The translations under genes and the position numbers were made by a program. Shown here piece after piece: positions 12,001 to 36,289 of a DNA stretch of 64,000 bases. The notes beneath the pieces were generated by a model, which worked only from the letters and a program-made list of their open reading frames with translations, did not search any database and was not told the origin of the DNA. Positions within the stretch are counted from its first letter, which is position 1, and every line of letters starts with the position of its first letter. Source of the DNA: Azolla caroliniana (Eukaryota; Plantae; Polypodiophyta); assembly GCA_043228905.1 (NCBI GenBank), contig JBHGNT010000029.1:62001-126000 (forward strand), given 5' to 3'.

Positions 12001-15000
12001 GACGTGAGTTTCAAAATCTTGATTTTTTAATTCCATATTAGAGCTAGCGTTGTTAGCTTCGATTCGCATGTTTGAACACAGAAATCCGATATCACACGAG
12101 CCAGGTATGAACATTTTAATTTACAAACGCGATCTTCTCCACTACCTCCTCAAATTTGCTAATTTCTTCATGTCTCTCGACGTGAGTTTCAAAATCTTGA
12201 TTTTTTAATTCCATATTAGAGATAGCGTTGTTAGCTTCGATTCGCATGTTTGAACACAGAAATCCGATATCACACGAGCTAGGTATGAACATTTTCATTT
12301 ACTAACGCGCTCTCCTCCACTTCCTCCTCAAATTTGCTAATTTCTTCATGTCTCTGGACCTGAGTTACAAAATCTTGATTTTTTAATTCCATATTACAGA
12401 TAGCGTTGTTAGCTTCGATTCGCATGTTTGAACACAGAAATCCGATATCACACGAGCCAGGTATGAACATTTTAATTTACTAACGCGCTCTTCTCCACTT
12501 CCTCCTCAAATTTGCTAATTTCTTCATGTCTCTCGACGTGAGTTTCAAAATCTTGATTTTTTAATTCCATATTAGAGATAACGTTGTTAGCTTCGATTCG
12601 CATGTTTGAACACAGAAATCCGATATCACACGAGCCAGGTATGAACATTTTCATTTACTAACGCGCTCTTCTCCACTTCCTCCTCAAATTTGCTAATTTC
12701 TTCATGTCTCTGGACCTGAGTTTCAAAATCTTGATTTTTGAATTCCATATTAGAGATAGCGTTGTTAGCTTCGATTCGCATGTTTGAACACAGAAATCCG
12801 ATATCACTCGAGCCAGGTATGAACATTTTAATTTACTAACACGCTCTTCTCCACTTCCTCCTCAAATTTGCTAATTTCTTCATGTCTCTCGACGTGAGTT
12901 TCAAAATCTTGATTTTTTAATTCCATATTAGAGATAGCGTTGTTAGCTTCGATTCGCATGTTTGAACACAGAAATCCGATATCACACGAGCCAGGTATGA
13001 ACATTTTCATTTACTAACGCGCTCTTCTCCACTTCCTCCTCAAATTTGCTAATTTCTTCATGTCTCTGGACCTGAGTTTCAAAATCTTGATTTTTGAATT
13101 CCATATTAGAGATAGCGTTGTTAGCTTCGATTCGCATGTTTGAACACAGAAATCCGATATCACTCGAGCCAGGTATGAACATTTTAATTTACTAACACGC
13201 TCTTCTCCACTTCCTCCTCAAATTTGCTAATTTCTTCATGTCTCTCGACCTGAGTTTCAAAATCTTGATTTTTTAATTCAATATTAGAGATAGCGTTGTT
13301 AGCTTCGATTCGCATGTTTGAACACAGAAATCCGATATCACACGAGCTAGGTATGAACATTTTCATTTACTAACGCGCTCTCCTCCACTTCCTCCTCAAA
13401 TTTGCTAATTTCTTCATGTCTCTGGACCTGAGTTTCAAAATCTTGATTTTTTAATTCCATATTAGAGATAGCGTTGTTAGCTTCGATTCGCATGTTTGAA
13501 CACAGAAATCCGATATCACACGAGCCAGGTATGAACATTTTAATTTACTGACTCGTTCTTCTCCACTTCCTCCTCAAATTTGCTAATTTCTTCATGTCTC
13601 TGGACCTGAGTTTCAAAATCTTGATTTTTTAATTCCATATTAGAGCTAGCATTGTTAGCTTCGAGTCGCATGTTTGAACACAGAAATCCGATATCAAACG
13701 AGCAAGGTATGAACATTTTAATTTACTGACTCGCTCTTCTCCACTTCCTCCTCAAATTTGCTAATTTCTTCATGTCTCTTGACCTGAGTTTCAAAATCTT
13801 GATTTTTTAATTCAATATTAGAGCTAGCGTTGTTAGCTTCGATTCGCATGTTTGAACACAGAAATCCGATATCACACGAGCCAGGTATGAACATTTTAAT
13901 TTACTAACGCGCTCTTCTCCACTACCTCCTCAAATTTGCTAATTTATTCATGTCTCTCGAGCTGAGTTTTAAAATCTTGATTTTGTAATTCCATATCATA
14001 GCTAGCGTTGTTAGCTTCGATTCGCATGTTTGAACACCGAAATCCGATATCACACGAGCCAGGTATGAACATTTTAATTTACTGACTCGTTCTTCTCAAC
14101 TTCCTCCTCAAATATACTAATTTCTTCATGTCTCTCGACCAGAGTTTCAAAATCTTGATTTTTTAATTCCATATTAGAGCTAGCGTTGTTAGCTTCGAGT
14201 CGCATGTTTGAACACAGAAATCCGATATCAAACGAGCAAGGTATGAACATTTTAATTTACTGACTCGCTCTTCTCCACTTCCTCCTCAAATTTGCTAATT
14301 TCTTCATGTCTCTTGACCTGAGTTTCAAAATCTTGATTTTTTAATTCAATATTAGAGCTAGCGTTGTTAGCTTCGATTCGCATGTTTGAACACAGAAATC
14401 CGATATCACACGAGCCAGGTATGAACATTTTAATTTACAAACGTGATCTTCTCCACTTCCTCCTCAAATTTGCTAATTTCTTCATGTCTCTGGACCTGAG
14501 TTTCAAAATCTTGTTTTTTCGATTCCATATTATAATTTACTAACGCGCTCTTCTCCACTACCTCCTCAAATTTGCAAATTTCTTCATGTCTCTCGACCTG
14601 AGTTTCAAAATCTTGATTTTTTAATTCCATATCATAGCTAGCGTTGTTAGCTTCGATTCGCATGTTTAAACACAAAAATCCGATATCACACGAGCCAGGT
14701 ATGAACATTTTAATTTACTAACAGGCTCTTCTTCACTACCTCCTCAAATTTGCTAATTTGTTCATGTCTCTCGACCTGAGTTTCAAAATCTTGATTTTTT
14801 AATTCCATATTAGAGCTAGCGTTGTTAGCTTCGATTCGCATGTTTGAACACAGAAATCCGATATCACACGAGCCAGGTATGAACATTTTAATTTACAAAC
14901 GCGATCTTCTCCACTACCTCCTCAAATTTGCTAATTTCTTCATGTCTCTCGACCTGAGTTTCAAAATCTTGATTTTTTAATTCAATATTAGAGATAGCGT

Positions 15001-18000
15001 TGTTAGCTTCGATTCGCATGTTTGAACACAGAAATCCGATATCACACGAGCCAGGTATGAACATTTTAATTTACTAACGCACTCTTCTCCACTACCTCCT
15101 CAAATTTGCAAATTTCTTCATGTCTCTCGACCTGAGTTTCAAAATCTTGATTTTTTAATTCCATATTAGAGATAGCGTTGTTAGCTTCGATTCGCATGTT
15201 TGAACACAGAAATCCGATATCACACGAGCCAGGTATGAACATTTTAATTTACTAACGCGCTCTTCTCCACTTCCTCCTCAAATTTGCTAATTTCTTCATG
15301 TCTCTCGACGTGAGTTTCAAAATCTTGATTTTTTAATTCCATATTAGAGATAACGTTGTTAGCTTCGATTCGCATGTTTGAACACAGAAATCCGATATCA
15401 CACGAGCCAGGTATGAACATTTTCATTTACTAACGCGCTCTTCTCCACTTCCTCCTCAAATTTGCTAATTTCTTCATGTCTCTGGACCTGAGTTTCAAAA
15501 TCTTGATTTTTGAATTCCATATTAGAGATAGCGTTGTTAGCTTCGATTCGCATGTTTGAACACAGAAATCCGATATCACTCGAGCCAGGTATGAACATTT
15601 TAATTTACTAACACGCTCTTCTCCACTTCCTCCTCAAATTTACTAATTTCTTCATGTCTCTCGACGTGAGTTTCAAAATCTTGATTTTTTAATTCCATAT
15701 TAGAGATAGCGTTGTTAGCTTCGATTCGCATGTTTGAACACAGAAATCCGATATCACACGAGCCAGGTATGAACATTTTCATTTACTAACGCGCTCTTCT
15801 CCACTTCCTCCTCAAATTTGCAAATTTCTTCATGTCTCTCGACCTGAGTTTCAAAATCTTGATTTTTGAATTCCATATTAGAGCTAGCGTTGTTAGGTTG
15901 GATTCGCATGTTTGAACACAGAAATCCGATATCACACGAGCCAGGTATGAACATTTTAATTTACTAACGCGCTCTTCTCCACTACCTCCTCAAATTTGCT
16001 AATTTATTCATGTCTCTCGAGCTGAGTTTTAAAATCTTGATTTTGTAATTCCATATCATAGCTAGCGTTGTTAGCTTCGATTCGCATGTTTGGACACAGA
16101 AATCCGATATCACACGAGCCAGGTATGAACATTTTAATTTACTATCGCGCTCTTCTCCACTTCCTCCTCAAATTTGCAAATTTCTTCATGTCTCTCGACC
16201 TGAGTTTCAAAATCTTGATTTTTGAATTCCATATTAGAGCTAGCGTTGTTAGGTTGGATTCGCATGTTTGAACACAGAAATCCGATATCACACGAGCCAG
16301 GTATGAACATTTTAATTTACTAACGCGCTCTTCTCCACTACCTCCTCAAATTTGCTAATTTATTCATGTCTCTCGAGCTGAGTTTTAAAATCTTGATTTT
16401 GTAATTCCATATCATAGCTAGCGTTGTTAGCTTCGATTCGCATGTTTGAACACCGAAATCCGATATCACACGAGCCAGGTATGAACATTTTAATTTACTG
16501 ACTCGTTCTTCTCAACTTCCTCCTCAAATATACTAATTTCTTCATGTCTCTCGACCAGAGTTTCAAAATCTTGATTTTTTAATTCCATATTAGAGCTAGC
16601 GTTGTTAGCTTCGAGTCGCATGTTTGAACACAGAAATCCGATATCAAACGAGCAAGGTATGAACATTTTAATTTACTGACTCGCTCTTCTCCACTTCTTC
16701 CTCAAATTTGCTAATTTCTTCATGTCTCTTGACCTGAGTTTCAAAATCTTGATTTTTTAATTCAATATTAGAGCTAGCGTTGTTAGCTTCGATTCGCATG
16801 TTTGAACACAGAAATCCGATATCACACGAGCCAGGTATGAACATTTTAATTTACAAACGTGATCTTCTCCACTTCCTCCTCAAATTTGCTAATTTCTTCA
16901 TGTCTCTGGACCTGAGTTTCAAAATCTTGTTTTTTCGATTCCATATTATAATTTACTAACGCGCTCTTCTCCACTACCTCCTCAAATTTGCAAATTTCTT
17001 CATGTCTCTCGACCTGAGTTTCAAAATCTTGATTTTTTAATTCCATATCATAGCTAGCGTTGTTAGCTTCGATTCGCATGTTTAAACACAAAAATCCGAT
17101 ATCACACGAGCCAGGTATGAACATTTTAATTTACTAACAGGCTCTTCTTCACTACCTCCTCAAATTTGCTAATTTGTTCATGTCTCTCGACCTGAGTTTC
17201 AAAATCTTGATTTTTTAATTCCATATTAGAGCTAGCGTTGTTAGCTTCGATTCGCATGTTTGAACACAGAAATCCGATATCACACGAGCCAGGTATGAAC
17301 ATTTTAATTTACAAACGCGATCTTCTCCACTACCTCCTCAAATTTGCTAATTTCTTCATGTCTCTCGACCTGAGTTTCAAAATCTTGATTTTTTAATTCA
17401 ATATTAGAGATAGCGTTGTTAGCTTCGATTCGCATGTTTGAACACAAAAATCCGATATCACACGAGCCAGGTATGAACATTTTAATTTACTAACGCACTC
17501 TTCTCCACTACCTCCTCAAATTTGCAAATTTCTTCATGTCTCTCGACCTGAGTTTCAAAATCTTGATTTTTTAATTCCATATTAGAGATAGCGTTGTTAG
17601 CTTCGATTCGCATGTTTGAACACAGAAATCCGATATCACACGAGCCAGGTATGAACATTTTAATTTACTAACGCGCTCTTCTCCACTTCCTCCTCAAATT
17701 TGCTAATTTCTTCATGTCTCTCGACGTGAGTTTCAAAATCTTGATTTTTTAATTCCATATTAGAGATAACGTTGTTAGCTTCGATTCGCATGTTTGAACA
17801 CAGAAATCCGATATCACACGAGCCAGGTATGAACATTTTCATTTACTAACGCGCTCTTCTCCACTTCCTCCTCAAATTTGCTAATTTCTTCATGTCTCTG
17901 GACCTGAGTTTCAAAATCTTGATTTTTGAATTCCATATTAGAGATAGCGTTGTTAGCTTCGATTCGCATGTTTGAACACAGAAATCCGATATCACTCGAG

Positions 18001-21000
18001 CCAGGTATGAACATTTTAATTTACTAACACGCTCTTCTCCACTTCCTCCTCAAATTTGCTAATTTCTTCATGTCTCTCGACGTGAGTTTCAAAATCTTGA
18101 TTTTTTAATTCCATATTAGAGATAGCGTTGTTAGCTTCGATTCGCATGTTTGAACACAGAAATCCGATATCACACGAGCCAGGTATGAACATTTTCATTT
18201 ACTAACGCGCTCTTCTCCACTTCCTCCTCAAATTTGCTAATTTCTTCATGTCTCTGGACCTGAGTTTCAAAATCTTGATTTTTGAATTCCATATTAGAGA
18301 TAGCGTTGTTAGCTTCGATTCGCATGTTTGAACACAGAAATCCGATATCACTCGAGCCAGGTATGAACATTTTAATTTACTAACACGCTCTTCTCCACTT
18401 CCTCCTCAAATTTGCTAATTTCTTCATGTCTCTAGACCTGAGTTTCAAAATCTTGATTTTTGAATTCCATATTAGAGCTAGCGTTGTTAGGTTTGATTCG
18501 CATGTTTGAACACAGAAATCCGATATCACACGAGCCAGGTATGAACATTTTAATTTACTAACGCGCTCTTCTCCACTTCCTCCTCAAATTTGCTAATTTA
18601 TTCATGTCTCTCGACGTGAGTTTCAAAATCTTGATTTTTTAATTCTATATTAGAGATAGCGTTGTTAGCTTCGATTCGCATGTTTGAACACAGAAATCCG
18701 ATATCACACGAGCCAGGTATGAACATTTTAATTTACTAACGCGCTCTTCTCCACTTCCTCCTCAAATTTGCAAATTTCTTCATGTCTCTCGACCTGAGTT
18801 TCAAAATCTTGATTTTTGAATTCCATATTAGAGCTAGCGTTGTTAGGTTGGATTCGCATGTTTGAACACAGAAATCCGATATCACACGAGCCAGGTATGA
18901 ACATTTTAATTTACTAACGCGCTCTTCTCCACTACCTCCTCAAATTTGCTAATTTATTCATGTCTCTCGAGCTGAGTTTTAAAATCTTGATTTTGTAATT
19001 CCATATCATAGCTAGCGTTGTTAGCTTCGATTCGCATGTTTGAACACCGAAATCCGATATCACACGAGCCAGGTATGAACATTTTAATTTACTGACTCGT
19101 TCTTCTCAACTTCCTCCTCAAATATGCTAATTTCTTCATGTCTCTCGACCAGAGTTTCAAAATCTTGATTTTTTAATTCCATATTAGAGCTAGCGTTGTT
19201 AGCTTCGAGTCGCATGTTTGAACACAGAAATCCGATATCAAACGAGCAAGGTATGAACATTTTAATTTACTGACTCGCTCTTCTCCACTTCCTCCTCAAA
19301 TTTGCTAATTTCTTCATGTCTCTTGACCTGAGTTTCAAAATCTTGATTTTTTAATTCAATATTAGAGCTAGCGTTGTTAGCTTCGATTCGCATGTTTGAA
19401 CACAGAAATCCGATATCACACGAGCCAGGTATGAACATTTTAATTTACAAACGTGATCTTCTCCACTTCCTCCTCAAATTTGCTAATTTCTTCATGTCTC
19501 TGGACCTGAGTTTCAAAATCTTGTTTTTTCGATTCCATATTATAATTTACTAACGCGCTCTTCTCCACTACCTCCTCAAATTTGCAAATTTCTTCATGTC
19601 TCTCGACCTGAGTTTCAAAATCTTGATTTTTTAATTCCATATCATAGCTAGCGTTGTTAGCTTCGATTCGCATGTTTAAACACAAAAATCCGATATCACA
19701 CGAGCCAGGTATGAACATTTTAATTTACTAACAGGCTCTTCTTCACTACCTCCTCAAATTTGCTAATTTGTTCATGTCTCTCGACCTGAGTTTCAAAATC
19801 TTGATTTTTTAATTCCATATTAGAGCTAGCGTTGTTAGCTTCGATTCGCATGTTTGAACACAGAAATCCGATATCACACGAGCCAGGTATGAACATTTTA
19901 ATTTACAAACGCGATCTTCTCCACTACCTCCTCAAATTTGCTAATTTCTTCATGTCTCTCGACCTGAGTTTCAAAATCTTGATTTTCTAATTCCATATTA
20001 GAGATAGCGTTGTTAGCTTCGATTCGCATGTTTGAACACAGAAATCCGATATCACAAGAGCCAGGTATGAACATTTTAATTTACTAACGCACTCTTCTCC
20101 ACTACCTCCTCAAATTTGCAAATTTCTTCATGTCTCTCGACCTGAGTTTCAAAATCTTGATTTTTTAATTCCATATTAGAGCTAGCGTTGTTAGCTTCGA
20201 TTCGCATGTTTGAACACAGAAATCCGATATCACACAAGCCGGGTATGAACATTTTAATTTACAAACGCGATCTTCTCCACTACCTCCTCAAATTTGCTAA
20301 TTTCTTCATGTCTCTCGACCTGAGTTTCAAAATCTTGATTTTTTAATTCAATATTAGAGATAGCGTTGTTAGCTTCGATTCGCATGTTTGAACACAGAAA
20401 TCCGATATCACACGAGCTAGGTATGAACATTTTCATTTACTAACGCGCTCTCCTCCACTTCCTCCTCAAATTTGCTAATTTCTTCATGTCTCTGGACCTG
20501 AGTTTCAAAATCTTGATTTTTTAATTCCATATTAGAGATAGCGTTGTTAGCTTCGATTCGCATGTTTGAACACAGAAATCCGATATCACACGAGCCAGGT
20601 ATGAACATTTTAATTTACTAACGCGCTCTTCTCCACTTCCTCCTCAAATTTGCTAATTTCTTCATGTCTCTCGACGTGAGTTTCAAAATCTTGATTTTTT
20701 AATTCGATATTAGAGATAGCGTTGTTAGCTTCGATTCGCATGTTTGAACACAGAAATCCGATATCACACGAGCCAGGTATGAACATTTTCATTTACTAAC
20801 GCGCTCTTCTCCACTTCCTCCTCAAATTTGCTAATTTATTCATGTCTCTCGACGTGAGTTTCGAAATCTTGATTTTTGAATTCCATATTAGAGCTAGCGT
20901 TGTTAGGTTGGATTCGCATGTTTGAACACAGAAATCCGATATCACACGAGCCAGGTATGAACATTTTAATTTACTGACTCGCTCTTCTCAACTTCCTCCT

Positions 21001-24000
21001 CAAATATGCTAATTTCTTTATGTCTCTCGACCTGAGTTTCAAAATCTTGATTTTTTAATTCCATATTAGAGCTAGCGTTGTTAGCTTCGATTCGCATGTT
21101 TGAACACAGAAATCCGATATTACACGAGCCAGGTATGAACATTTTAATTTACTAACGCGCTCTTCTCCACTTCCTCCTCAAATTTGCTAATTTCTTCATG
21201 TCTCTGGACCTGAGTTTCAAAATCTAGTTTTTTCGATTCCATATTAGAGCTAGCGTTGTTAGCTTTGAGTCGCATGTTTGAACACAGAAATCCGATATCA
21301 CACGAGCCAGGTATGAACATTTTAATTTACAAACGCGATCTTCTCCACTACCTCCTCAAATTTGCTAATTTCTTCATGTCTCTTGACCTGAGTTTCAAAA
21401 TCTTGATTTTTGAATTCCATATTAGAGATAGCGTTGTTAGCTTCGATTCGCATGTTTGAACACAGAAATCCGATATCACACGAGCCAGGTATGAACATTT
21501 TAATTTACTAACGCGCTCTTCTCCACTACCTCCTCAAATTTGCTAATTTATTCATGTCTCTCGAGCTGAGTTTTAAAATCTTGATTTTGTAATTCCATAT
21601 CATAGCTAGCGTTGTTAGCTTCGATTCGCATGTTTGAACACCGAAATCCGATATCACACGAGCCAGGTATGAACATTTTAATTTACTGACTCGTTCTTCT
21701 CAACTTCCTCCTCAAATATGCTAATTTCTTCATGTCTCTCGACCTGAGTTTCAAAATCTTGATTTTTTAATTCCATATTAGAGCTAGCGTTGTTAGCTTC
21801 GAGTCGCATGTTTGAACACAGAAATCCGATATCAAACGAGCCAGGTATAAACATTTTAATTTACAAACGCGATCTTCTCCACTACCTCCTCCAATTTGCT
21901 AATTTCTTCATGTCTCTCGACCTGAGTTTCAAAATCTTGATTTTTTAATTCAATATTAGAGATAGCGTTGTTAGCTTCGATTCGCATGTTTGAACACAGA
22001 AATCCGATATCACACGAGCCAGGTATGAACATTTTAATTTACAAACGCGATCTTCTCCACTACCTCCTCAAATTTGCTAATTTCTTGATGTCTCTCGCCC
22101 TGAGTTTCAAAATCTTGATTTTTTAATTCCATATTAGAGATAGCGTTGTTAGCTTCGATTCGCATGTTTGAACACAGAAATCCGACATCACACGAGCCAG
22201 GTATGAACATTTTCATTTACTAACGCGCTCTTCTCCACTTCCTCCTCAAATTTGCTAATTTCTTCATGTCTCTGGACCTGAGTTTCAAAATCTTGATTTT
22301 TTAATTCCATATTAGAGATAGCGTTGTTAGCTTCGATTCGCATGTTTGAACACAGAAATCCGATATCACACGAGCCAGGTATGAACATTTTAATTTACTA
22401 ACGCGCTCTTCTCCACTTCCTCCTCAAATTTGCTAATTTCTTCATGTCTCTGGACCTGAGTTTCAAAATCTTGATTTTTGAATTCCATATTAGAGGTAGC
22501 GTTGTTAGCTTCGATTCGCATGTTTGAACACAGAAATCCGATATCACACGAGCCAGGTATGAACATTTTAATTTACTAACGCGCTCTTCTCCACTACCTC
22601 CTCAAATTTGCTAATTTCTTCATGTCTCTTGACCTGAGTTTCAAAATCTTGATTTTTTAATTCAATATTAGAGCTAGCGTTGTTAGCTTCGATTCGCATG
22701 TTTGAACACCGAAATCCGATATCACACGAGCCAGGTATGAACATTTTAATTTACTGACTCGCTCTTCTCAACTTCCTCCTCAAATATGCTAATTTCTTCA
22801 TGTCTCTCGACCTGAGTTTCAAAATCTTGATTTTTTAATTCCATATTAGAGCTAGCGTTGTTAGCTTCGATTCGCATGTTTGAACACAGAAATCCGATAT
22901 CACACGAGCCAGGTATGAACATTTTAATTTACTAACGCGCTCTTCTCCACTTCCTCCTCAAATTTGCTAATTTCTTCATGTCTCTCGACCTGAGTTTCAA
23001 AATCTTGATTTTTTAATTCAATATTAGAGCTAGCGTTGTTAGCTTCGATTCGCATGTTTGAACACAAAAATCCGATATCACACGAGCCAGGTATGAACAT
23101 TTTAATTTACTAACGGGCTCTTCTTCACTACCTCCTCAAATTTGCTAATTTCTTCATGTCTCTCGACCTGAGTTTCAAAATATTGATTTTTTAATTCCAT
23201 ATTAGAGCTAGCGTTGTTAGCTTCGATTCGCATGTTTGAACACAGAAATCCGATATCACACGAGCCAGGTATGAACATTTTAATTTACAAACGCGATCTT
23301 CTCCACTACCTCCTCTAATTCGCATGTTTGAACACAGAAATCCGATATCACATGAGCCAGGTATGAACATTTTAATTTACTAACGCGCTCTTCTCCACTT
23401 CCTCCTCAAATTTGCTAATTTCTTCATGTCTCAGGACCTGAGTTTCAAAATCTTGATTTTTTAATTCCATATTAGAGATAGCGTTGTTAGCTTCGATTCA
23501 CATGTTTAAACACAAAAATCCGATATCACAGGAGCCAGGTATGAACATTTTAATTTACTAACGGGCTCTTCTTCACTACCTCCTCAAATTTGCTAATTTC
23601 TTCATGTCTCTCGACCTGAATTTCAAATTCTGTATTTTCTAATTCCATATCATAGCTAGTGTTGTTAGCTTCGATTCGCATGTTTGAACACTAAAATACG
23701 ATATCGCACGAGACAGGTATGACAATTTTAATTTACTCACGCGCTGTTCTCAACTCCCTCCTCTAATTTTCTAATTTCTTCATGTCTCTCGACCTGAGTT
23801 TCAAAATCTTGATTTTCTAATTCCATATCATAGCTAGTGTTGTTAGCTTTGATTGGCATGTTTGAACACAAAAATCCGATATCACAAGAGCCAGGTATGA
23901 CAATTTTAATTTACTGACGCAATCTTCTCAACTCCCTCCTCTAATTTACTAATTTCATCATGTCTCTCGACCTGAGTTTCAAAATTTGTATTTTCTAATT

Positions 24001-24839
24001 CGATATCATAGCTAGTGTTGTTAGCTTCGATTCCATGTTTGGAAACTAAAATCCGATATCACACGAGCTAGGTATGACAATTTTATTTACTAACACAATC
24101 TTCTAAACTCCCTCTTCTAATTTACTAATTTCATCATGTCTCTCGACCTGAGTTTCAAAATCTTGATTTTGTAATTCCATGTCATAGCTAGTGTTGTTAG
24201 CTTCGATTCGCATGTTTGAACACTAAAATCCGATATCACACGAGCCAGGTATGACAATTTTAATTTACTGACGCACTCTTCTCAACTTTCTCCTCTAATT
24301 TTCTAATTTCTTCATGTCTGTCCACCTGAGTTTCAAAATCTTGAATTTCTAATTGCATAGCGTAGCTAGTGTTGTTAGCTTCGATTCGCATCTTTGAACA
24401 CAAAAATACGATATCACACGAGCCAGGTATGACAATTTTAATTTACTCACGCGCTCTTCTCAACTCCCTCCTCTAATTTTCTAATTTCTTCATGTCTCTC
24501 GACCTGAGTTTGAAAATCTAGATTTTTTAATTCCATATCATAGCTAGTTTTGTTAGCTTCGATTTGCAGCTTTGAACACTAAAATCCGATATCACACGAG
24601 CCAGGTATGACAATTTTAATTTACCGACGCGCTCTTCTCAACTGCCTCCTCTAATTTACTAATTCCATCATGTCTCTCGACCTGAGTTTCAAAATCTTGA
24701 TTTTTTAATTCCATATTAGAGATAGCGTTGTTAGCTTCGATTCGCATGTTTGAACACAGAAATCCGATATCACACGAGCCAGGTATGAACATTTTCATTT
24801 ACTAACGCGCTCTTCTCCACTTCCTCCTCAAATTTGCTA
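1..24839. repeat. 178-bp tandem satellite array, left arm (mostly type A; type B monomers at ~23580-24690)
   Basis: The motif GATATCACACGAGCCAGGTATGAAC recurs every 178 bp (e.g. 8, 186, 364). Monomers are highly similar, with recurring 102-bp truncated monomers. Centromeric identity is inferred only from monomer size and higher-order organisation. Confidence 0.98.
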
Positions 24840-24842
24840 TTG

Positions 24843-24848
24843 TTTATT
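24843..24848 (-). terminator. Possible AATAAA polyadenylation signal at the extreme 3' end of the unit (also 30424-30429 and 36026-36031)
   Basis: TTTATT on +, only 3 nt inside the unit boundary; no poly(A) tail at any junction. Confidence 0.3.
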
Positions 24849-24912
24849 AACCGTAAGGTTGATACAAGGAGTGCGAGCGACTTTTAGCTATGGTAGATAA
24901 TGTAATAGGAAA

Positions 24913-25065
24913 GGGTTTAGGGTTTCCGGATTAGGGTTTAGGGTTTTGGGATTAGGGTTTAGGGCTTCGGGATTAGGGTTTTGGGATTAGGGTTTTGGGT
25001 TTCGAGATTAGGGTTTCAGGATTAGGGTTTCGGGATTAGGGTTTCGGGATTAGGTCTAGGGTTTA
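24913..25065 (+). repeat. Degenerate telomere-like tract (mostly 7-bp units GGGTTTA/GGGATTA/GGGTTTC) near the element 3' end, unit 1
   Basis: About 150 bp of TTTAGGG-like repeats, G-rich on + and C-rich on the element sense strand. Confidence 0.9.
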
Positions 25066-25148: not shown

Positions 25149-25177
25149 CAGGAAAATTCCATTAAAATAAAAGGAAA

Positions 25178-25236
25178 GACCTTATGCAGCAAACTAGTTT
25201 CGCTCTTTTAGGTAGAGCTCATCAGTGCAAAAGGTC
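25178..25236 (-). ncRNA. Type I hammerhead ribozyme motif in 3' UTR, unit 1
   Basis: The minus strand reads GACCTT-T-TGCA CTGATGA GCTCT-ACCTAAA-AGAGC GAAAC-TA-GTT TGC TGCA-T-AAGGTC: conserved CUGAUGA and GAAAC cores, 5-bp stem II, minimal palindromic stem III and a closing stem I. Confidence 0.85.
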
Positions 25237-25600
25237 ATGTACATACAAAAGGTGGTTTATATAGGATGTTGAGGATGGGGAAGGGAGGAGAATGTATAAT
25301 CATAGTGAGTGGGGTACAATAACAATGTAAATAGATGGAGGGCTGTAAGGTTTTAAGTTGGAAGATCTTGATGATAGAGGGGGTGGTGATATGGGGGGGG
25401 AAACAAAATGGGCTGGTGAATGGAAGATTGATAGGGTGATAAGACAGATGAGGGAGTAGGAAAAGGTGAATAAGGGGAAATGAATGAGTGGTAGGGTGTG
25501 TAATTATATGTAAATAAAAGAAAGAAGGGAAAGTTAAAGGAAGTTAATAAGAGGTATTAGGGAGAGGGGTTGAGGGAAGAGGGAAGAGAGAGAGTGTATA

Positions 25601-25897: not shown

Positions 25898-27868
25898 TTA
25901 TAGTGGCTCTAGGATGTTTTTAGTTTTTACTAGAAGGGAGTGGAGGTTTTTGGATTTAGTCCAACAAATAATGGGTTTAGGGATATGTTGTAGTTGGGGA
26001 TCTAATTGGATATCATAGTGTAGGTTAGTTAGTATTTTCTTAATAATTAGTGTGGGGGTATGGCGAGTATATCTAAGTTTAAAGATAGTGGGTGGGGTGG
26101 TCTTTTTAGTTTTTTCTTTGAAAAGGAGAGTGTGTCTAAGGGAGTAAGGGTGTTTTCGAAAGTTATTTAGAATAAAATGTGTGGGATAACCTCGGGCTCT
26201 AAGTCTCGTAAAGAATTTTTTTTGCATATTTAAATAACCTAGGGCCGTGCTTTCTCTAATCATATATCTTTTGAGTTCATTTGAAACAAAACTATTTTTA
26301 ACATGTAGAGGGTGATTGGAGGAATAAGGGATGTATTGATATGTGTTAAGTGTTTTTTGAAAGCAATTAAAGGTGAATCTATTATTATCTAATCTAATCC
26401 AAAGGTCTAAAAAGGGTAGTTTCGTGTAAGAAGTGTGTATGGTTAGTTTTATAGAGTTTTGAGTAGAGTTACTATAGAAGTTTAGGTATTCGAGAAGTTG
26501 GATTTTAGTACCAGTCCAGACGCCAAAGGCATCATCAATATACCTAGTGAAATAGAAAAGGTGGGGTGATGGATTGGAATTTTCTAGATATGAGAGGAAG
26601 AGACATGCATACACGACGGAAAAATTACTACCCATGGCTGTTCCTTTTACCTGTTGATAAATTTGGTTGTTAAATTTAAGGAAGTGGTATTCTAAGGTGA
26701 GGGCACTAAGGGTGTAAATCAAATTGGTTTTTTGGTTAGAAAAGTGGGGGGCAATAAGGTTTTTTAGGGCAGAGAGTCCTAGTTTAGGTGGGATGCTAGG
26801 GTAGAGGGATTCAACATCAAAAGAAAAAATGAAGCTATTGGGTGGTGTTATAAGTTGTTCTAAAGTTTGGACAAGGGAATGGGAGTCCCTAAGATACTGT
26901 TTTTGAACTAGAAGTATGGGGAGGAGTTGATGGTGAAGCCATTTAGACGTTTGTTCAAATAATGAACCGTTATATGAGCAAATCGGTCTATAGCTAACAG
27001 GACTTTTATGTACTTTTGGCAAGAAGTACATATTAGGTATTGAGTAACCTTTAGGAGGTTTGTGTAGGATAAATTCTATTTCTATGAGAGATAAGATATT
27101 ACGATTACAATTGACTATGTCTTGTAGTCGACTTAAAAGTTCTTCTAATGGGAGACTATCAACTTTTTTATATGTAGTGATGTCGGATAAATGTTCTAGG
27201 GCTTTATCTAAGTATGTTTTTTTATCGAGGACACAAACTCCAATGTTTTTGTCCGCTGGTAGGATGGTTATTTTATTATTATTTTTAAGGCTAGTTATTG
27301 CTAATTGGAGGTGTAGTGGTATTTTGATATTAGGTAATATATTATCATGGAGGTTTGTGGAGAGAGAGATATTGTGTTTATGGAGTATAGATTCTAATGG
27401 TGGATATTTAGTAGGAGGGTTCCAATTCGGGTTGGGTAGTTTGAAGGGATTAGAGGGAGGAGAGTTGGATTTTCTAAAGAAATGTTTAAGTCTCAAGGAT
27501 CTACTTAGGTTTTGGTATTCTTGAAGAATGGATTGGTTAGTAGGTGGGGGGCAAGGGGGTATAAACTTAAGTCCTAGGTTTAAAAGTTTCATTTCTAGTT
27601 TACTAAGGGTGTAACTTGAAAGATTATGAATTTTACTTTGTAAGATGGAAGTAGTGTCTATGGTGGGAGTAAGTGGTTTCCAAAACTTGTATCTAAGCCT
27701 TTTAGGGCGTGATTTAGTATAAGGGGAGAAAGGGAAGTGGGAGTTTTCTTTACCTAGCCACATGTACGTATCATGTGTCAAAGGGGGCCTATCTAGTATG
27801 TAAAAAAGACGCTTACAAGGGTGTAAGGCGTGCTTAAACTGTTTACTAATTCGTTTAGCACGCCTCAC
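25898..27868 (-). CDS. Penelope-like reverse transcriptase (ORF2), no endonuclease; probably expressed as an ORF1-RT fusion by -1 frameshift
   Basis: PLE RT motifs in order: LNLGLKFIP, ILPADKN, YFLPKVHK, YRPICS, FSFDVESLYPSIP (A), QVKGTAMGSNFS (B), RYIDD (C), LPFLDL (E), YSSNHP, RARGYP. The protein ends ~75 aa after RGYP with no GIY-YIG or Cys/His linker. The track start at 27868 is GTG; the frame is open from 27904 and the first ATG is at 27763. Confidence 0.95.
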   Translation of the reverse strand: MRRAKRISKQFKHALHPCKRLFYILDRPPLTHDTYMWLGKENSHFPFSPYTKSRPKRLRYKFWKPLTPTIDTTSILQSKIHNLSSYTLSKLEMKLLNLGLKFIPPCPPPTNQSILQEYQNLSRSLRLKHFFRKSNSPPSNPFKLPNPNWNPPTKYPPLESILHKHNISLSTNLHDNILPNIKIPLHLQLAITSLKNNNKITILPADKNIGVCVLDKKTYLDKALEHLSDITTYKKVDSLPLEELLSRLQDIVNCNRNILSLIEIEFILHKPPKGYSIPNMYFLPKVHKSPVSYRPICSYNGSLFEQTSKWLHHQLLPILLVQKQYLRDSHSLVQTLEQLITPPNSFIFSFDVESLYPSIPPKLGLSALKNLIAPHFSNQKTNLIYTLSALTLEYHFLKFNNQIYQQVKGTAMGSNFSVVYACLFLSYLENSNPSPHLFYFTRYIDDAFGVWTGTKIQLLEYLNFYSNSTQNSIKLTIHTSYTKLPFLDLWIRLDNNRFTFNCFQKTLNTYQYIPYSSNHPLHVKNSFVSNELKRYMIRESTALGYLNMQKKFFTRLRARGYPTHFILNNFRKHPYSLRHTLLFKEKTKKTTPPTIFKLRYTRHTPTLIIKKILTNLHYDIQLDPQLQHIPKPIICWTKSKNLHSLLVKTKNILEPL

Positions 27869-27880
27869 TACACGTTTTTT
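27823..27880 (-). promoter_or_regulatory. Programmed -1 ribosomal frameshift signal (slippery heptamer A_AAA_AAC plus stimulatory hairpin), unit 1
   Basis: ORF1 ends CCA AAA AAC GTG TAG; the -1 frame AAA AAA CGT GTA GTG AGG is the RT frame. Five nt after the heptamer, GTGAGGCGTGCT pairs with AGCACGCCTTAC (12 bp, one G-U), extendable by AAAC/GTTT. Confidence 0.85.
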
Positions 27881-30402
27881 GGTTTCGACACATGAGTTGG
27901 AGTTTTAGATGGGGGTTGATAGGGGGGTTTGTAAGAGTTGTGTGGGTTTGATTTATTATGTGGGTGGGTGGCTGGGGCAGATGGGTTAGAATTACAAAAA
28001 AGGGAAGGGGTATTAGATGTAAATAGGGAGGGGTTACTAACAGGAAAATGGAAAGGGGTATTAGACGTAAATGGGGAGGGGTTCTTATTTATATTATGTG
28101 GAAATAAGAGGGGGTTGCCGTGTGTGGAATTATTAGGAAAAGAGAGGGGGGTATGGGAGGAGTGTGTGAAAATATTGGGGGGGTTTGTGAAAATATTGAG
28201 GGGGTTTGGGGCTATATTAGAGATTGGGGAAGGGGCAAGACCAAAATTATACAAAATGTTAGGGGGGTAATTAGGGTGGGGATCATTACAAAAAAGGGGC
28301 ATGGGGTTATGGAGGGGAATATTGGAAAGTAACGGGGGGGTATACAGAGAATTATTAAGAAGTGTAGGGGGAAGGTTTTGAGAGTGAGTGGGATATGGGT
28401 AAAGGGATGGGCTATGTTGTTGCCCTAGCGTAGGAGGAGGGAAAGAAAATTGAGGGGGAGAGGTATCGAGGGGCTTAGTATACGGAGGAGGGTTGGAGAG
28501 CAGAGGGGGAAGGTGAGAATGGGGGAGATGCTTTCTATTGTAGTCGAACGCAGGACCTGAGTTTGGGACAGCGTTATGGCCCGCCTGTGAATTAATCTCG
28601 TCCTGTTGTTGATGGCTATGTTGGGCCGACGAGAAACTAGCAGGTGCAGCCGAAGAGTAGAAGCTATGGACCAGAGACGGGGGTCCTCGGTGTGCAGCCT
28701 GTGACCAAGCATGTGTATGGTGGCTCGTGTCTCTGTGGCCATCGAAAAGTGATGATGGTGGTAGTTGATGGAGATCTCGTGGTGGATGATTAAAGTGGTT
28801 GATGTCCGTGTTGCCGCCGAAGAGTGATGATGGTGGTCGGTGTGGGTGATCTTGTGGTGGATGAAGCCAAGAACCTGTACGAAGGGAAGCATGTGTCGTG
28901 AAATTGGAGTTCGGGTTATGGTGGGGGTAGGCCGAGTTTATGTTAGGGCCTGCCGAAAGCTCGTTCGATCTATAGAAAAGTACTTGTGGGTTTTGATGGT
29001 TGAGGTTCGGGTTGATGCTAACTTCATTGTTATTCATGTTGCAGATGAATTGAGGATGGTCGCGGATGAAGTGAGGGTGGTTGCGGTGGTTGGATGGTCC
29101 GCGGTGGTTGCGGTGGTTGGATGGTCCGCGGTGAAAATGTGGTGGAGGAGGCTTCGGGTTTGCTGATGGAGGCCGAGGGTTAGGGTTTGGGTTAGTGTTA
29201 GGATTAGGGTTAGGGTTAGGGTGTGTTCTGAAATTAGGGTTAGGGTTAGGGTGTGTTCTGAAATTAGGGTTAGGGTTAGGGTTAGGGTTGGGTTCTTTTC
29301 TCAAGTTAGGGTTAGGGTTGGGTTTCGGGTTTGTTCTCAAGTTAGGGTTAGGGTTGGGATTCGGGTTTGTTCTCAAATTAGGGTTAGGGTTAGGGTTGGG
29401 CTTAGGGGTTGTTCTCAAATTAAGGTTAGGGTTAATTCTCGAGTTAGGATTATAGTCTTTATCTTTATACTGAAATTTATTATATTGTACTTTCTCAAAA
29501 CTGTCGACAACTTTTTCAATATCATCTTCAATATCATCATCTGACTCCATATCTATGTCTATCTCTCTAATATGGTGCTTACTTGTGCTTTGAGTGTTCT
29601 CATTTAGTGATTGGGCTTTATCTTTTCTTTGCATAGCAGCAACTCTAAAGGCTTCCCTATAAGTGAATGAGAGAGCTATAGTATTACATTCTTTTAGAAT
29701 ATTAGTTGCTAACTCTTCTTGGAAAATTTCAAGCTGTTTGCTAAATGAGTTTGGACTCGAATTGGATTCCTCTACTTCGTCAAAACAAACAGGGGCTTTT
29801 AGGAGATTAGCAATCTTGAGAATATCAGCTCGTACAGTCATAGGAAAATCATCTACTGTTTTTGTGTAGTAATGGACAAGACTATCTAAATGCTTGACAT
29901 ATGTGGTAGTGAGATCTTTACTATATTGTGTTGTGATGGAAGCAAACTCTAGTTGTAGGCTTTTATTTATATCTTCGTGCTCAATAATTAGTCTTGGGGG
30001 CTGGATTCTCAAGCTATGAGGGGCTATATTCTGAGAATTAAGGTTTGACATACGACTATATGTTTTTTTAGCTTTTTGAGCTTTTCGATAGAGGTTTTTA
30101 AACTCTGCGATTATTCTACACTTGTAATCTTCAAAGTGTTGGGAAATTAGCGGTGATTCATTGGAGATTACCTGGGTACTAGTAGTTTTTGCAGGGGTCG
30201 GAGTAGTTGAGACTATTGGAGCTCGCGGTCTTTTAGTTGGACGTTTGTTGGCGCTTCTAGGTTTCGTTGGGGTAGGTGTAGTGGAAGTAGCCGCTGCAAA
30301 AGTCATCATCTCTTGTGGAGGGAACTCGGCATTGAATGGTGATTCGATGCGAGTCGAACTATCACTATTATGGGTTCCAAACTCCGATGATAAGCCCTCC
30401 AT
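27868..30402 (-). CDS. Retroelement ORF1, 844 aa: predicted helical/coiled-coil N-terminal region, acidic patch, (PN)n repeats, long Pro/Asn/His/Ser-rich disordered C-terminus
   Basis: 2.5-kb uninterrupted ORF directly upstream of the RT, intact in two copies. The first ATG is at 30402 (the track start at 30411 is GTG; an in-frame TAG lies at 30417-30415). Function is inferred from position only. Confidence 0.85.
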   Translation of the reverse strand: MEGLSSEFGTHNSDSSTRIESPFNAEFPPQEMMTFAAATSTTPTPTKPRSANKRPTKRPRAPIVSTTPTPAKTTSTQVISNESPLISQHFEDYKCRIIAEFKNLYRKAQKAKKTYSRMSNLNSQNIAPHSLRIQPPRLIIEHEDINKSLQLEFASITTQYSKDLTTTYVKHLDSLVHYYTKTVDDFPMTVRADILKIANLLKAPVCFDEVEESNSSPNSFSKQLEIFQEELATNILKECNTIALSFTYREAFRVAAMQRKDKAQSLNENTQSTSKHHIREIDIDMESDDDIEDDIEKVVDSFEKVQYNKFQYKDKDYNPNSRINPNLNLRTTPKPNPNPNPNLRTNPNPNPNPNLRTNPKPNPNPNLRKEPNPNPNPNPNFRTHPNPNPNFRTHPNPNPNPNTNPNPNPRPPSANPKPPPPHFHRGPSNHRNHRGPSNHRNHPHFIRDHPQFICNMNNNEVSINPNLNHQNPQVLFYRSNELSAGPNINSAYPHHNPNSNFTTHASLRTGSWLHPPQDHPHRPPSSLFGGNTDINHFNHPPRDLHQLPPSSLFDGHRDTSHHTHAWSQAAHRGPPSLVHSFYSSAAPASFSSAQHSHQQQDEINSQAGHNAVPNSGPAFDYNRKHLPHSHLPPLLSNPPPYTKPLDTSPPQFSFPPPTLGQQHSPSLYPYPTHSQNLPPTLLNNSLYTPPLLSNIPLHNPMPLFCNDPHPNYPPNILYNFGLAPSPISNIAPNPLNIFTNPPNIFTHSSHTPLSFPNNSTHGNPLLFPHNINKNPSPFTSNTPFHFPVSNPSLFTSNTPSLFCNSNPSAPATHPHNKSNPHNSYKPPYQPPSKTPTHVSKPKNV
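29177..29434 (+). repeat. (TTAGGG)n-rich coding minisatellite in ORF1 (encodes PNPNPN; 30/36-bp super-units), unit 1
   Basis: Runs of GGGTTA interrupted by GTTCTGAAA/GTTCTCAA spacers; translates as (F/L)RT(H/N)PNPNPN. Confidence 0.9.
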
Positions 30403-30493
30403 AGAAAACACGATCTAGCTTTGTTTATTAACCGTAAGGTTGATACAAGGAGTGCGAGCGACTTTTAGCTATGGTAGATAATGTAATAGGAAA

Positions 30494-30646
30494 GGGTTTA
30501 GGGTTTCCGGATTAGGGTTTAGGGTTTTGGGATTAGGGTTTAGGGCTTCGGGATTAGGGTTTTGGGATTAGGGTTTTGGGTTTCGAGATTAGGGTTTCAG
30601 GATTAGGGTTTCGGGATTAGGGTTTCGGGATTAGGTCTAGGGTTTA
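30494..30646 (+). repeat. Degenerate telomere-like tract, unit 2
   Basis: Same sequence as in unit 1. Confidence 0.9.
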
Positions 30647-30684
30647 CATAGATAATGTAATAAGAAAAGATTCTAAGCACACAT

Positions 30685-30789
<105 letters not shown>

Positions 30790-30818
30790 CAGGAAAATTC
30801 CATTAAAATAAAAGGAAA

Positions 30819-30877
30819 GACCTTATGCAGCAAACTAGTTTCGCTCTTTTAGGTAGAGCTCATCAGTGCAAAAGGTC
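30819..30877 (-). ncRNA. Type I hammerhead ribozyme motif, unit 2
   Basis: Identical to the unit 1 motif. Confidence 0.85.
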
Positions 30878-31499
30878 ATGTACATACAAAAGGTGGTTTA
30901 TATAGGATGTTGAGGATGGGGAAGGGAGGAGAATGTATAATCATAGTGAGTGGGGTACAATAACAATGTAAATAGATGGAGGGCTGTAAGGTTTTAAGTT
31001 GGAAGATCTTGATGATAGAGGGGGTGGTGATATGGGGGGGGAAACAAAATGGGCTGGTGAATGGAAGATTGATAGGGTGATAAGACAGATGAGGGAGTAG
31101 GAAAAGGTGAATAAGGGGAAATGAATGAGTGGTAGGGTGTGTAATTATATGTAAATAAAAGAAAGAAGGGAAAGTTAAAGGAAGTTAATAAGAGGTATTA
31201 GGGAGAGGGGTTGAGGGAAGAGGGAAGAGAGAGAGTGTATAAAAAGGTAGTGAGAGGAAGAGGGGATGAGAAATGGAAAAAAAGGGGGAGGGGGAGATGG
31301 AATATAGTTTTTAGTGAGATATAAGGGAAATATTGGGGGGGAAAAAAAGGGAGGGGGAGATAGAATATAGTTTTTAGTGAGATATAAGGGAAATATTGGG
31401 GGAAAAAAGTAGATGTGTGTGACTACAAAATAAAAGTAAGGGGGAAGGAGAGAGGAACAAGGAAAGGGGATAGATTAAATGAAGGGTGAGAAAATATGT

Positions 31500-33470
31500 T
31501 TATAGTGGCTCTAGGATGTTTTTAGTTTTTACTAGAAGGGAGTGGAGGTTTTTGGATTTAGTCCAACAAATAATGGGTTTAGGGATATGTTGTAGTTGGG
31601 GATCTAATTGGATATCATAGTGTAGGTTAGTTAGTATTTTCTTAATAATTAGTGTGGGGGTATGGCGAGTATATCTAAGTTTAAAGATAGTGGGTGGGGT
31701 GGTCTTTTTAGTTTTTTCTTTGAAAAGGAGAGTGTGTCTAAGGGAGTAAGGGTGTTTTCGAAAGTTATTTAGAATAAAATGTGTGGGATAACCTCGGGCT
31801 CTAAGTCTCGTAAAGAATTTTTTTTGCATATTTAAATAACCTAGGGCCGTGCTTTCTCTAATCATATATCTTTTGAGTTCATTTGAAACAAAACTATTTT
31901 TAACATGTAGAGGGTGATTGGAGGAATAAGGGATGTATTGATATGTGTTAAGTGTTTTTTGAAAGCAATTAAAGGTGAATCTATTATTATCTAATCTAAT
32001 CCAAAGGTCTAAAAAGGGTAGTTTCGTGTAAGAAGTGTGTATGGTTAGTTTTATAGAGTTTTGAGTAGAGTTACTATAGAAGTTTAGGTATTCGAGAAGT
32101 TGGATTTTAGTACCAGTCCAGACGCCAAAGGCATCATCAATATACCTAGTGAAATAGAAAAGGTGGGGTGATGGATTGGAATTTTCTAGATATGAGAGGA
32201 AGAGACATGCATACACGACGGAAAAATTACTACCCATGGCTGTTCCTTTTACCTGTTGATAAATTTGGTTGTTAAATTTAAGGAAGTGGTATTCTAAGGT
32301 GAGGGCACTAAGGGTGTAAATCAAATTGGTTTTTTGGTTAGAAAAGTGGGGGGCAATAAGGTTTTTTAGGGCAGAGAGTCCTAGTTTAGGTGGGATGCTA
32401 GGGTAGAGGGATTCAACATCAAAAGAAAAAATGAAGCTATTGGGTGGTGTTATAAGTTGTTCTAAAGTTTGGACAAGGGAATGGGAGTCCCTAAGATACT
32501 GTTTTTGAACTAGAAGTATGGGGAGGAGTTGATGGTGAAGCCATTTAGACGTTTGTTCAAATAATGAACCGTTATATGAGCAAATCGGTCTATAGCTAAC
32601 AGGACTTTTATGTACTTTTGGCAAGAAGTACATATTAGGTATTGAGTAACCTTTAGGAGGTTTGTGTAGGATAAATTCTATTTCTATGAGAGATAAGATA
32701 TTACGATTACAATTGACTATGTCTTGTAGTCGACTTAAAAGTTCTTCTAATGGGAGACTATCAACTTTTTTATATGTAGTGATGTCGGATAAATGTTCTA
32801 GGGCTTTATCTAAGTATGTTTTTTTATCGAGGACACAAACTCCAATGTTTTTGTCCGCTGGTAGGATGGTTATTTTATTATTATTTTTAAGGCTAGTTAT
32901 TGCTAATTGGAGGTGTAGTGGTATTTTGATATTAGGTAATATATTATCATGGAGGTTTGTGGAGAGAGAGATATTGTGTTTATGGAGTATAGATTCTAAT
33001 GGTGGATATTTAGTAGGAGGGTTCCAATTCGGGTTGGGTAGTTTGAAGGGATTAGAGGGAGGAGAGTTGGATTTTCTAAAGAAATGTTTAAGTCTCAAGG
33101 ATCTACTTAGGTTTTGGTATTCTTGAAGAATGGATTGGTTAGTAGGTGGGGGGCAAGGGGGTATAAAATTAAGTCCTAGGTTTAAAAGTTTCATTTCTAG
33201 TTTACTAAGGGTGTAACTTGAAAGATTATGAATTTTACTTTGTAAGATGGAAGTAGTGTCTATGGTGGGAGTAAGTGGTTTCCAAAACTTGTATCTAAGC
33301 CTTTTAGGGCGTGATTTAGTATAAGGGGAGAAAGGGAAGTGGGAGTTTTCTTTACCTAGCCACATGTACGTATCATGTGTCAAAGGGGGCCTATCTAGTA
33401 TGTAAAAAAGACGCTTACAAGGGTGTAAGGCGTGCTTAAACTGTTTACTAATTCGTTTAGCACGCCTCAC
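31500..33470 (-). CDS. Penelope-like reverse transcriptase (ORF2), unit 2
   Basis: Identical to the unit 1 RT except GLKFI>GLNFI; all catalytic motifs intact. Confidence 0.95.
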   Translation of the reverse strand: MRRAKRISKQFKHALHPCKRLFYILDRPPLTHDTYMWLGKENSHFPFSPYTKSRPKRLRYKFWKPLTPTIDTTSILQSKIHNLSSYTLSKLEMKLLNLGLNFIPPCPPPTNQSILQEYQNLSRSLRLKHFFRKSNSPPSNPFKLPNPNWNPPTKYPPLESILHKHNISLSTNLHDNILPNIKIPLHLQLAITSLKNNNKITILPADKNIGVCVLDKKTYLDKALEHLSDITTYKKVDSLPLEELLSRLQDIVNCNRNILSLIEIEFILHKPPKGYSIPNMYFLPKVHKSPVSYRPICSYNGSLFEQTSKWLHHQLLPILLVQKQYLRDSHSLVQTLEQLITPPNSFIFSFDVESLYPSIPPKLGLSALKNLIAPHFSNQKTNLIYTLSALTLEYHFLKFNNQIYQQVKGTAMGSNFSVVYACLFLSYLENSNPSPHLFYFTRYIDDAFGVWTGTKIQLLEYLNFYSNSTQNSIKLTIHTSYTKLPFLDLWIRLDNNRFTFNCFQKTLNTYQYIPYSSNHPLHVKNSFVSNELKRYMIRESTALGYLNMQKKFFTRLRARGYPTHFILNNFRKHPYSLRHTLLFKEKTKKTTPPTIFKLRYTRHTPTLIIKKILTNLHYDIQLDPQLQHIPKPIICWTKSKNLHSLLVKTKNILEPL

Positions 33471-33482
33471 TACACGTTTTTT
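33425..33482 (-). promoter_or_regulatory. Programmed -1 ribosomal frameshift signal, unit 2
   Basis: Identical to the unit 1 cassette. Confidence 0.85.
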
Positions 33483-36004: not shown

Positions 36005-36095
36005 AGAAAACACGATCTAGCTTTGTTTATTAACCGTAAGGTTGATACAAGGAGTGCGAGCGACTTTTAGCTATGGTAGATAATGTAATAGGAAA

Positions 36096-36248: not shown

Positions 36249-36286
36249 CATAGATAATGTAATAAGAAAAGATTCTAAGCACACAT

Positions 36287-36289
<3 letters not shown>

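What the first reader, a model, noticed from the sequence alone, without database searches (positions are those of the whole stretch)
24690..24850. Out-of-place type-A satellite patch at the element 3' end: possible satellite-guided priming or 3' transduction
Seen: monomers from ~23580 to ~24670 are type B (GACAATTTT, CTCAACT, CTCTAATT, ATCATAGCTAGTG), as is everything right of the insertion. The last ~140-170 bp before the element revert to pure type A (ATTAGAGATAGCG, CACAGAAATCC, GAACATTTTCATT, CTCCACTTCCTCCTCAAATTTGC). The switch lies in sequence shared by both types, with monomer phase preserved. Inference: the template RNA may have read through from a donor copy in type-A satellite. Its satellite tail could then anneal to a broken type-B end and prime reverse transcription. 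This would be self-perpetuating, homology-based satellite targeting, analogous to Athena using telomeric repeats, and would also move satellite variants around.
Basis: partly seen in the sequence, partly recalled or inferred. Interest (0 to 1): 0.85.

Follow-up and report, generated by a model that had tools for sequence, protein, structure and literature searches.

The report
Satellite filler at retroelement repair junction
A nuclease-lacking Penelope-like jumping gene patched a break in a plant satellite array, and about 150 bases of the neighbouring satellite variant were copied in, in phase, exactly at its 3' end; the patch is real, but related copies end at the same element position next to unrelated DNA, so it looks like a one-off repair filler and not a satellite-guided targeting system.

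Summary
The last 135-172 bp before the element (to 24839) are pure type A inside a type-B tract. The last 157 bp match five monomers of the adjacent A array exactly, and no other of about 150 B monomers comes close. The element is a young, 2.5-unit, endonuclease-less Penelope-like retroelement of a land-plant clade, with no target duplication.

Three other 3' junctions (L013, L020, L031) end within about 10 nt of the same element position, next to non-satellite DNA. Internal unit junctions carry no satellite, and contigs of three public runs show no satellite branch there.

Best reading (0.42): the broken B end was first extended in phase on a type-A template (nearby DNA, or satellite RNA), then primed the RT at the element's fixed 3' start. 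One-off 3' transduction stays open (0.28). No donor or empty allele could be examined.

The scan has noted such elements in this satellite on at least five other pieces. My look-ups returned no variant patch elsewhere.

The parts
1..23597 (.). 178-bp satellite, type-A tract; homogenised core, more diverged last 2.8 kb
   Evidence: nearest-neighbour differences 0.56 (core) vs 3.9 (20.8-23.5 kb)
23592..23620 (.). older A-to-B border without any element (last A-state letter 23592, first B-only letter 23620)
23598..24667 (.). six type-B monomers plus four bases; no near-identical twin in the window (5-14 differences to the nearest)
24668..24704 (.). in-phase B-to-A switch zone, identical in both consensuses (probably 24683-24704)
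24705..24839 (+). type-A patch (minimal extent); 24683-24839 is an exact match to A monomers at 459, 3155, 4223, 12895 and 18083; inferred 3'-OH primer end at 24839 on the + strand
   Evidence: primer role inferred from element orientation
24840..24875 (-). element 3' terminus: small conserved hairpin (24849-24860) followed by an A-rich stretch; four junctions end 6-15 nt past the hairpin; no poly(A)
24912..25054 (-). degenerate telomere-like repeats (C-rich on the RNA strand), about 70 bp inside the terminus, not at the junction
25169..25239 (-). hammerhead ribozyme motif (weak HH9 match, E 0.052, below gathering score; core motifs intact, minimal palindromic stem III)
25898..27868 (-). RT ORF (656 aa), no GIY-YIG domain; land-plant endonuclease-less clade
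27868..30411 (-). ORF1 (847 aa), no Pfam hit, relatives only in the same element group
30421..36022 (-). second tandem unit; no satellite at the unit junction
36023..38841 (-). third, 5'-truncated unit
38839..38841 (.). 5' junction: 3-bp exact microhomology; satellite resumes at monomer column 89, type B; no target-site duplication (15 of 88 differences between left and right columns 89-176)
38839..64000 (.). type-B satellite tract

Best explanation
The patch is a templated filler laid down during the break repair that captured the element. (1, inferred) A double-strand break hit the seventh monomer of the B tract, 1.07 kb from an older A/B border. (2, inferred) The left 3' end annealed in phase, through 22-37 bp of perfect identity, to a type-A template. 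That was either a monomer of the adjacent A array (out-of-register strand invasion) or a type-A satellite transcript copied by the RT, and the end was extended by 135-172 nt. (3, partly shown) The new end primed reverse transcription at the element's own fixed 3' start just past a conserved hairpin; four junctions share this start. (4, structure shown) About 14 kb of tandem cDNA was made and its truncated 5' end joined the right B arm through a 3-bp microhomology. There is no duplication, and about 50-85 bp of target were lost (modulo 178). The element needs no satellite tail.
For: The patch is unique among about 150 B monomers and ends exactly at the junction. Its last 157 bp match the adjacent A array exactly, nearest copy 37 monomers away. 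The element has a fixed terminus with non-satellite flanks in L013, L020 and L031. There is no satellite at unit junctions and no abundant satellite branch in runs X3, X6 and X10. The A/B border looks old: A monomers diverge towards it. Four of six left B monomers have their nearest relative in the first 4.1 kb right of the element, suggesting a B target. Precedent: 15 of 21 endonuclease-independent L1 insertions carry 4-312 bp of extra DNA from local DNA or other RNAs, and 18 of 21 delete target (PMC1920257). Satellite homology-directed copying in Arabidopsis uses same-chromosome donors at a median of 16 units (10.1101/2025.06.02.657473). A PLE RT starts at a fixed internal RNA site in vitro (PMC11167929).
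Against: It is a single event, and the predicted sequence is the same as for cis transduction. Nearness to the border is only suggestive, because the insertion had to land near the border under every model. The matching haplotype is near-consensus A and may be genome-wide. The nearest exact donor is 6.6 kb away rather than among the closest A monomers. The tract is longer than the mean Arabidopsis conversion tract (58.5 bp). Logan contigs drop rare joins, so a single donor copy would be invisible. DNA and RNA templates are not separated.
Confidence: 0.42

Rival explanations
1. 3' transduction with homology priming. RNA from a donor copy sitting in type-A satellite read through its 3' end, the satellite tail annealed to the broken B end, and the RT copied tail plus element. 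As a one-off event about 0.21; as a self-perpetuating targeting strategy about 0.07.
For: Explains in one step the in-phase switch, the end exactly at the junction and the uniqueness. Orientation fits: a minus-strand tail pairs with the left arm's + strand end. Other satellite-embedded copies are noted in this genome (s1-500852, s1-504019; unchecked), and a sister family joins a third variant of this satellite at its 5' end (L003). PLEs can transduce host DNA (PMC6431247).
Against: Three of four 3' junctions are non-satellite at the same terminus. No abundant shared junction appears in three runs. No donor was seen. An active hammerhead some 330-350 nt upstream would cut the tail from the coding RNA, though uncleaved RNA is the main template for the anole PLE in vitro. 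Note s1-500852 describes de novo priming on a broken satellite end by a 14-base match (unchecked).
Confidence: 0.28
2. Purely DNA-level origin, separate from reverse transcription. Either non-allelic gene conversion turned one B monomer into A before or after the insertion, or the element plus its A flank came from another site or haplotype by strand invasion or unequal exchange in the 37-bp shared stretch.
For: Non-allelic conversion between nearby satellite units is frequent in Arabidopsis. An A array lies seven monomers away, and heterology at the element would stop a conversion tract there.
Against: None of the other six border-proximal B monomers, nor any right-tract monomer, has a long A tract, so hitting just the terminal monomer up to the junction is a coincidence. 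The element is very young (3 substitutions between units), which leaves little time afterwards.
Confidence: 0.2
3. Mirror reading: the patch is the true end of the A tract, the element sits on the A/B border, and the six B monomers were inserted later into the A tract as whole units.
For: Both switches fall in the same monomer interval (column 174 to 41), as a whole-unit insertion would give. Such kilobase insertions occur in Arabidopsis.
Against: The six B monomers have no twin in 25 kb of B tract (5-14 differences), although a recent copy should. A monomers become more diverged towards 23598, as at an old edge. That interval is also the longest non-diagnostic stretch, so the shared phase is weak evidence.
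Confidence: 0.05
4. Assembly or consensus artefact: a chimeric join of reads in a satellite array.
For: No public contig bridges this junction. Satellite arrays are error-prone to assemble.
Against: Monomers carry coherent private variants, both element junctions are clean, and the terminus matches independent junctions. The contig sets drop rare joins and may come from other accessions.
Confidence: 0.05

Closest known systems
Endonuclease-deficient Penelope-like elements (Athena/Coprina type; Selaginella telomeric PLEs; Terminons) - PMC8557442, PMC6431247, PMC4209133
   Same: Two ORFs, RT without GIY-YIG, hammerhead motif followed by reverse-complement telomere-like repeats, head-to-tail units, 5' truncation. 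The RT groups (SH-aLRT 99) with GIY-less proteins of Selaginella, Cryptomeria and an entry named Gb_11119.
   Different: Internal site in a 178-bp satellite. The telomere-like repeats lie about 70 bp inside the terminus and did not prime here. One relative (L013) lacks them at its 3' end. The 5' end is joined to satellite, not capped by telomere repeats.
Endonuclease-independent (non-classical) L1 insertions with extra nucleotides - PMC1920257
   Same: No target duplication, no poly(A), inferred target deletion, extra templated DNA within the reported 4-312 bp range at the 3' junction.
   Different: Different RT class. The filler is an in-phase variant of the target repeat, visible only through A/B markers. 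The element's 3' end is fixed, not truncated.
Internal initiation by the anole PLE PAc - PMC11167929
   Same: Copies end at a defined internal RNA position near a small stem-loop downstream of the hammerhead, regardless of target.
   Different: PAc has an endonuclease and starts inside its ORF; here the inferred start lies just before ORF1. Inferred from four junctions, not assayed.
3' transduction by L1 and host-DNA transduction by PLEs - PMC6431247
   Same: Foreign flank DNA directly after the element's 3' end.
   Different: No poly(A), no duplication, no donor identified; the flank is homologous to the target.
Non-allelic gene conversion in Arabidopsis CEN178 - 10.1101/2025.06.02.657473
   Same: In-phase copy of a nearby variant; exact donors on the same array.
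   Different: Tract two to three times the mean length and tied to a retroelement junction.

Membership tests
Endonuclease-less Penelope-like element | PLE-type RT grouping with PLE RTs | tested here: met
   Homologues include GIY-YIG-bearing RTs and GIY-less plant proteins; plant clade support 99. No named Athena or Coprina reference was in the tree.
Endonuclease-less Penelope-like element | No GIY-YIG domain | tested here: met
   Pfam finds only RVT_1; the same scan finds GIY-YIG in control P0036
Endonuclease-less Penelope-like element | Hammerhead motif in the terminal repeat | tested here: met
   HH9 match with intact core, but E 0.052 and below gathering score; cleavage not tested
Endonuclease-less Penelope-like element | Tandem or partial-tandem units | tested here: met
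   2.5 units; identical unit junction in family contigs
Athena/Terminon telomere attachment | Reverse-complement telomere repeats at the very 3' end pairing with a G-rich overhang | tested here: not met
   Repeats start at 24912, about 70 bp inside; the junction abuts satellite
Athena/Terminon telomere attachment | Location at a chromosome end | tested here: not met
   At least 24 kb of satellite on each side
3' transduction | Donor copy with the same junction and the same flank | tested here: inconclusive
   None among the family loci fetched or in contigs of runs X3, X6, X10; X9 unclear; rare joins are dropped; whole genome not searchable
3' transduction | Read-through transcript element-to-flank | not testable with these tools
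   No holder on record as RNA, and contigs only
Satellite-targeting retroelement | Independent copies share a satellite site or phase, or carry a satellite-matching 3' tail | tested here: not met
   3 of 4 junctions non-satellite; no satellite in unit junctions; no notable satellite match to the terminus at this phase. Short-read contigs are biased against satellite flanks.
Endonuclease-independent insertion with filler | No target-site duplication | tested here: met
Endonuclease-independent insertion with filler | Target deletion relative to the empty allele | not testable with these tools
   Inferred only from the phase jump (column 5-41 to 89); no empty allele available
Endonuclease-independent insertion with filler | Extra DNA traceable to a template | tested here: met
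   157-bp exact match to five A monomers in the window

The most novel reading that the evidence does not exclude
Endonuclease-less plant Penelope-like elements lodged in satellite make read-through RNAs whose satellite tail anneals to any broken monomer and primes the RT. This gives a facultative, self-perpetuating satellite-tropic lineage that also carries satellite variants between arrays, or the RT copies satellite transcripts onto broken ends before switching to its own RNA.
Probability: 0.12. Interest if true: 0.75.

Novelty: new variant of a known kind. Interest (0 to 1): 0.4.

Why it matters
Endonuclease-less PLEs are described as mostly confined to chromosome ends (PMC8557442). This locus shows one at an internal satellite break and records an intermediate step that is normally invisible: in-phase extension of the broken end on another satellite variant. 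It gives a concrete test of whether retroelement-assisted repair moves satellite variants, and of where these RTs start copying (a fixed site past a small hairpin). If the tail proved to be RNA-borne and recurrent, it would be a new route of satellite targeting and variant spread. As a single filler it is a good example of known break-repair behaviour.

Tried and rejected
Exact search for the element terminus in JGI metagenome contigs gave one tandem-unit contig only. Viral contigs had neither the terminus nor the A motif, and bacterial genomes lacked the B motif. Findings search by sequence was blank, which is uninformative for this genome.

An 87-bp target duplication was rejected (15 of 88 differences). 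A special microhomology between satellite column 176 and the element start was rejected: there is no exact match at the join, only three shared letters offset by one, and better chance sites exist elsewhere. No unusual RNA fold across tail plus 3' end (z 0.36).

Rebuilding the pre-insertion monomer from the left head and right stub was inconclusive. The stub's twins (43786, 46276) lack the two head variants, but their duplication borders are unknown. A/B interspersion away from the element: none in about 280 monomers. Unit differences (3 substitutions, AG length, one 39-bp repeat) do not separate RNA from DNA copying; two substitutions are private, and the 39-bp state varies in the family.

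The 2007 PNAS Athena paper was not held and is cited through reviews. The careful tree did not finish, so the quick tree was used. The host was not identified. No spliced model was involved.

Full report
Setting. The window is a 178-bp satellite array interrupted at 24840-38841 by a minus-strand element. The element has ORF1 (847 aa) and an RT ORF (656 aa; RVT_1 only, no GIY-YIG, positive control). It also has a hammerhead motif and degenerate telomere-like repeats about 70 bp inside its 3' end. It forms 2.5 head-to-tail units that differ by only three substitutions, AG-repeat length and one 39-bp repeat, so it is young. Its RT groups with GIY-less proteins of Selaginella and Cryptomeria (support 99, quick tree). 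The closest relatives lie in ENA metagenome contigs, and holders include leaf and plant metagenomes. The host is a land plant; earlier scan notes say fern, which I did not verify.

Observation. Two satellite types differ at 14 columns. Type A fills 1-23597; type B fills 23598-24667 and everything right of the element; the monomer at 24664 is pure A from column 42 to the junction. It has 1 difference to the A consensus and 15 to B over 135 columns, while the most A-like B monomer has 12 differences to A. A states at five strict sites never run longer than two in B tracts; the patch has five of five. Letters 24665 and 24667 are B-only, so the switch lies in 24668-24704, a stretch identical in both types. 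The last 157 bp match five A monomers of this window exactly. Those carry a variant at column 19 that the patch lacks, which narrows the likely switch to 24683-24704.

Was the target B? The A tract becomes less homogeneous over its last 2.8 kb (nearest-neighbour differences 3.9 against 0.56), as expected at an old edge. The six left B monomers have no twin, and four have their nearest relative within 4.1 kb right of the element; these monomers are not independent, so this is suggestive only. It favours an old border at 23598 and a break in the seventh B monomer. It disfavours the mirror reading that a B block was dropped into the A tract. The right junction has three exactly shared letters and resumes at column 89 in type B. 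There is no target duplication. With a B target, the smallest loss is about 50-85 bp.

Does the element need a satellite tail? No. Three further 3' junctions in public contigs end 6-15 nt past the same small hairpin, as the window's does (10 nt). They are L013 (99% identical family), L020 (85% identical copy) and L031 (sister family), all against non-satellite DNA. These come from short-read assemblies, which disfavour satellite flanks and can mis-join (L020 is probably chimeric at its far end). They still show an element-defined terminus, like the fixed internal start shown in vitro for an anole PLE (PMC11167929). Unit-to-unit junctions contain no satellite. In runs X3, X6 and X10 a single contig covers the terminus and continues 61-305 letters into non-satellite sequence, in X10 visibly the next unit, with no second contig over 24855-24912; X9 is mixed and unclear. 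These contigs drop rare joins, so this excludes only an abundant shared junction, which a self-perpetuating lineage would be expected to give.

Mechanism. Orientation makes the + strand 3' end at 24839 the primer. The best-supported account (0.42) has three steps. The broken B end was first extended in phase on a type-A template, either a monomer of the adjacent array or a satellite transcript. It then primed the RT at the fixed start. The truncated cDNA was joined to the right arm by microhomology. Extra templated DNA and target loss are the rule in endonuclease-independent L1 insertions (15 and 18 of 21 loci; PMC1920257). Homology-directed copying among nearby satellite units is measured in Arabidopsis (median donor distance 16 units, mean tract 58.5 bp; 10.1101/2025.06.02.657473). 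PLEs can transduce host DNA (PMC6431247), and satellite-embedded copies are noted elsewhere in this genome. Nearness to the A/B border is required for a local template to be visible, but it is a coincidence that every model shares, so I give it little weight. Independent conversion or DNA-level transfer (0.20) needs the tract to hit just the terminal monomer. Shown: patch, phase, fixed terminus, absence of duplication. Inferred: order of events, template type, deletion size.

Comparison. The element meets the tests for an endonuclease-less PLE but not those for Athena-type telomere attachment at this site. Transduction's defining features (donor, read-through RNA) could not be shown. Family-level satellite targeting failed the tests I could run. 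The patch is best filed as a new variant of a known kind: junction filler at a break-healing retroelement insertion, made visible by satellite variants.

Limits. One locus; no empty allele, long reads or RNA; one reads call; earlier scan notes are unchecked leads.

Noticed in passing
window 24849-24860 (-); L013 5658-5676, L020 2730-2755, L031 3838-3865: A small hairpin (four-base loop ending AC) followed by an A-rich stretch is kept across two element families, and all four 3' junctions end 6-15 nt past it: a candidate RT start signal.
   Followed up: partly
L020 2789-2863 and 3461-3535: An 85%-identical copy ends about 40 bp upstream of a tRNA-Phe gene in the same orientation; a second tRNA-Phe follows. 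The far end of the contig has a tRNA-Ala and a bacterial-looking helicase, so the contig is probably chimeric there.
   Followed up: partly
L003 1-302: A sister family (RT 74% identical) has its truncated 5' end joined to a third variant of the same satellite (84-88% identical to A and B).
   Followed up: partly
L013 5555-5675: The terminal copy of the 3' region lacks the telomere-like repeat block that the internal copy has, yet ends at the same terminus.
   Followed up: partly
L006 ~4940, L007 ~4924, L024 ~4923; window 29176-29434: Three sister-family contigs leave the element inside the six-base telomere-like repeat of ORF1 (encoding NP repeats): a second priming site, or misassembly at the repeat.
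   Followed up: no
L002 600-640: A 5'-truncated sister-family copy has about two plant-type telomere repeats at its 5' join to unrelated DNA.
   Followed up: no
window 27860-27880 (-): ORF1 and RT ORF meet at an A-rich slippery-type run, compatible with a -1 frameshift (also in note s1-497411).
   Followed up: no
window 1330-19590 and 47000-57700: Both tracts have higher-order repeats: a recurring 102-bp short monomer in A, and a near-perfect block of about 13 monomers (2.3 kb) repeated in B.
   Followed up: no
window 23150-23419: A 270-bp monomer with a 92-bp internal duplication sits two units left of the old A/B border.
   Followed up: no
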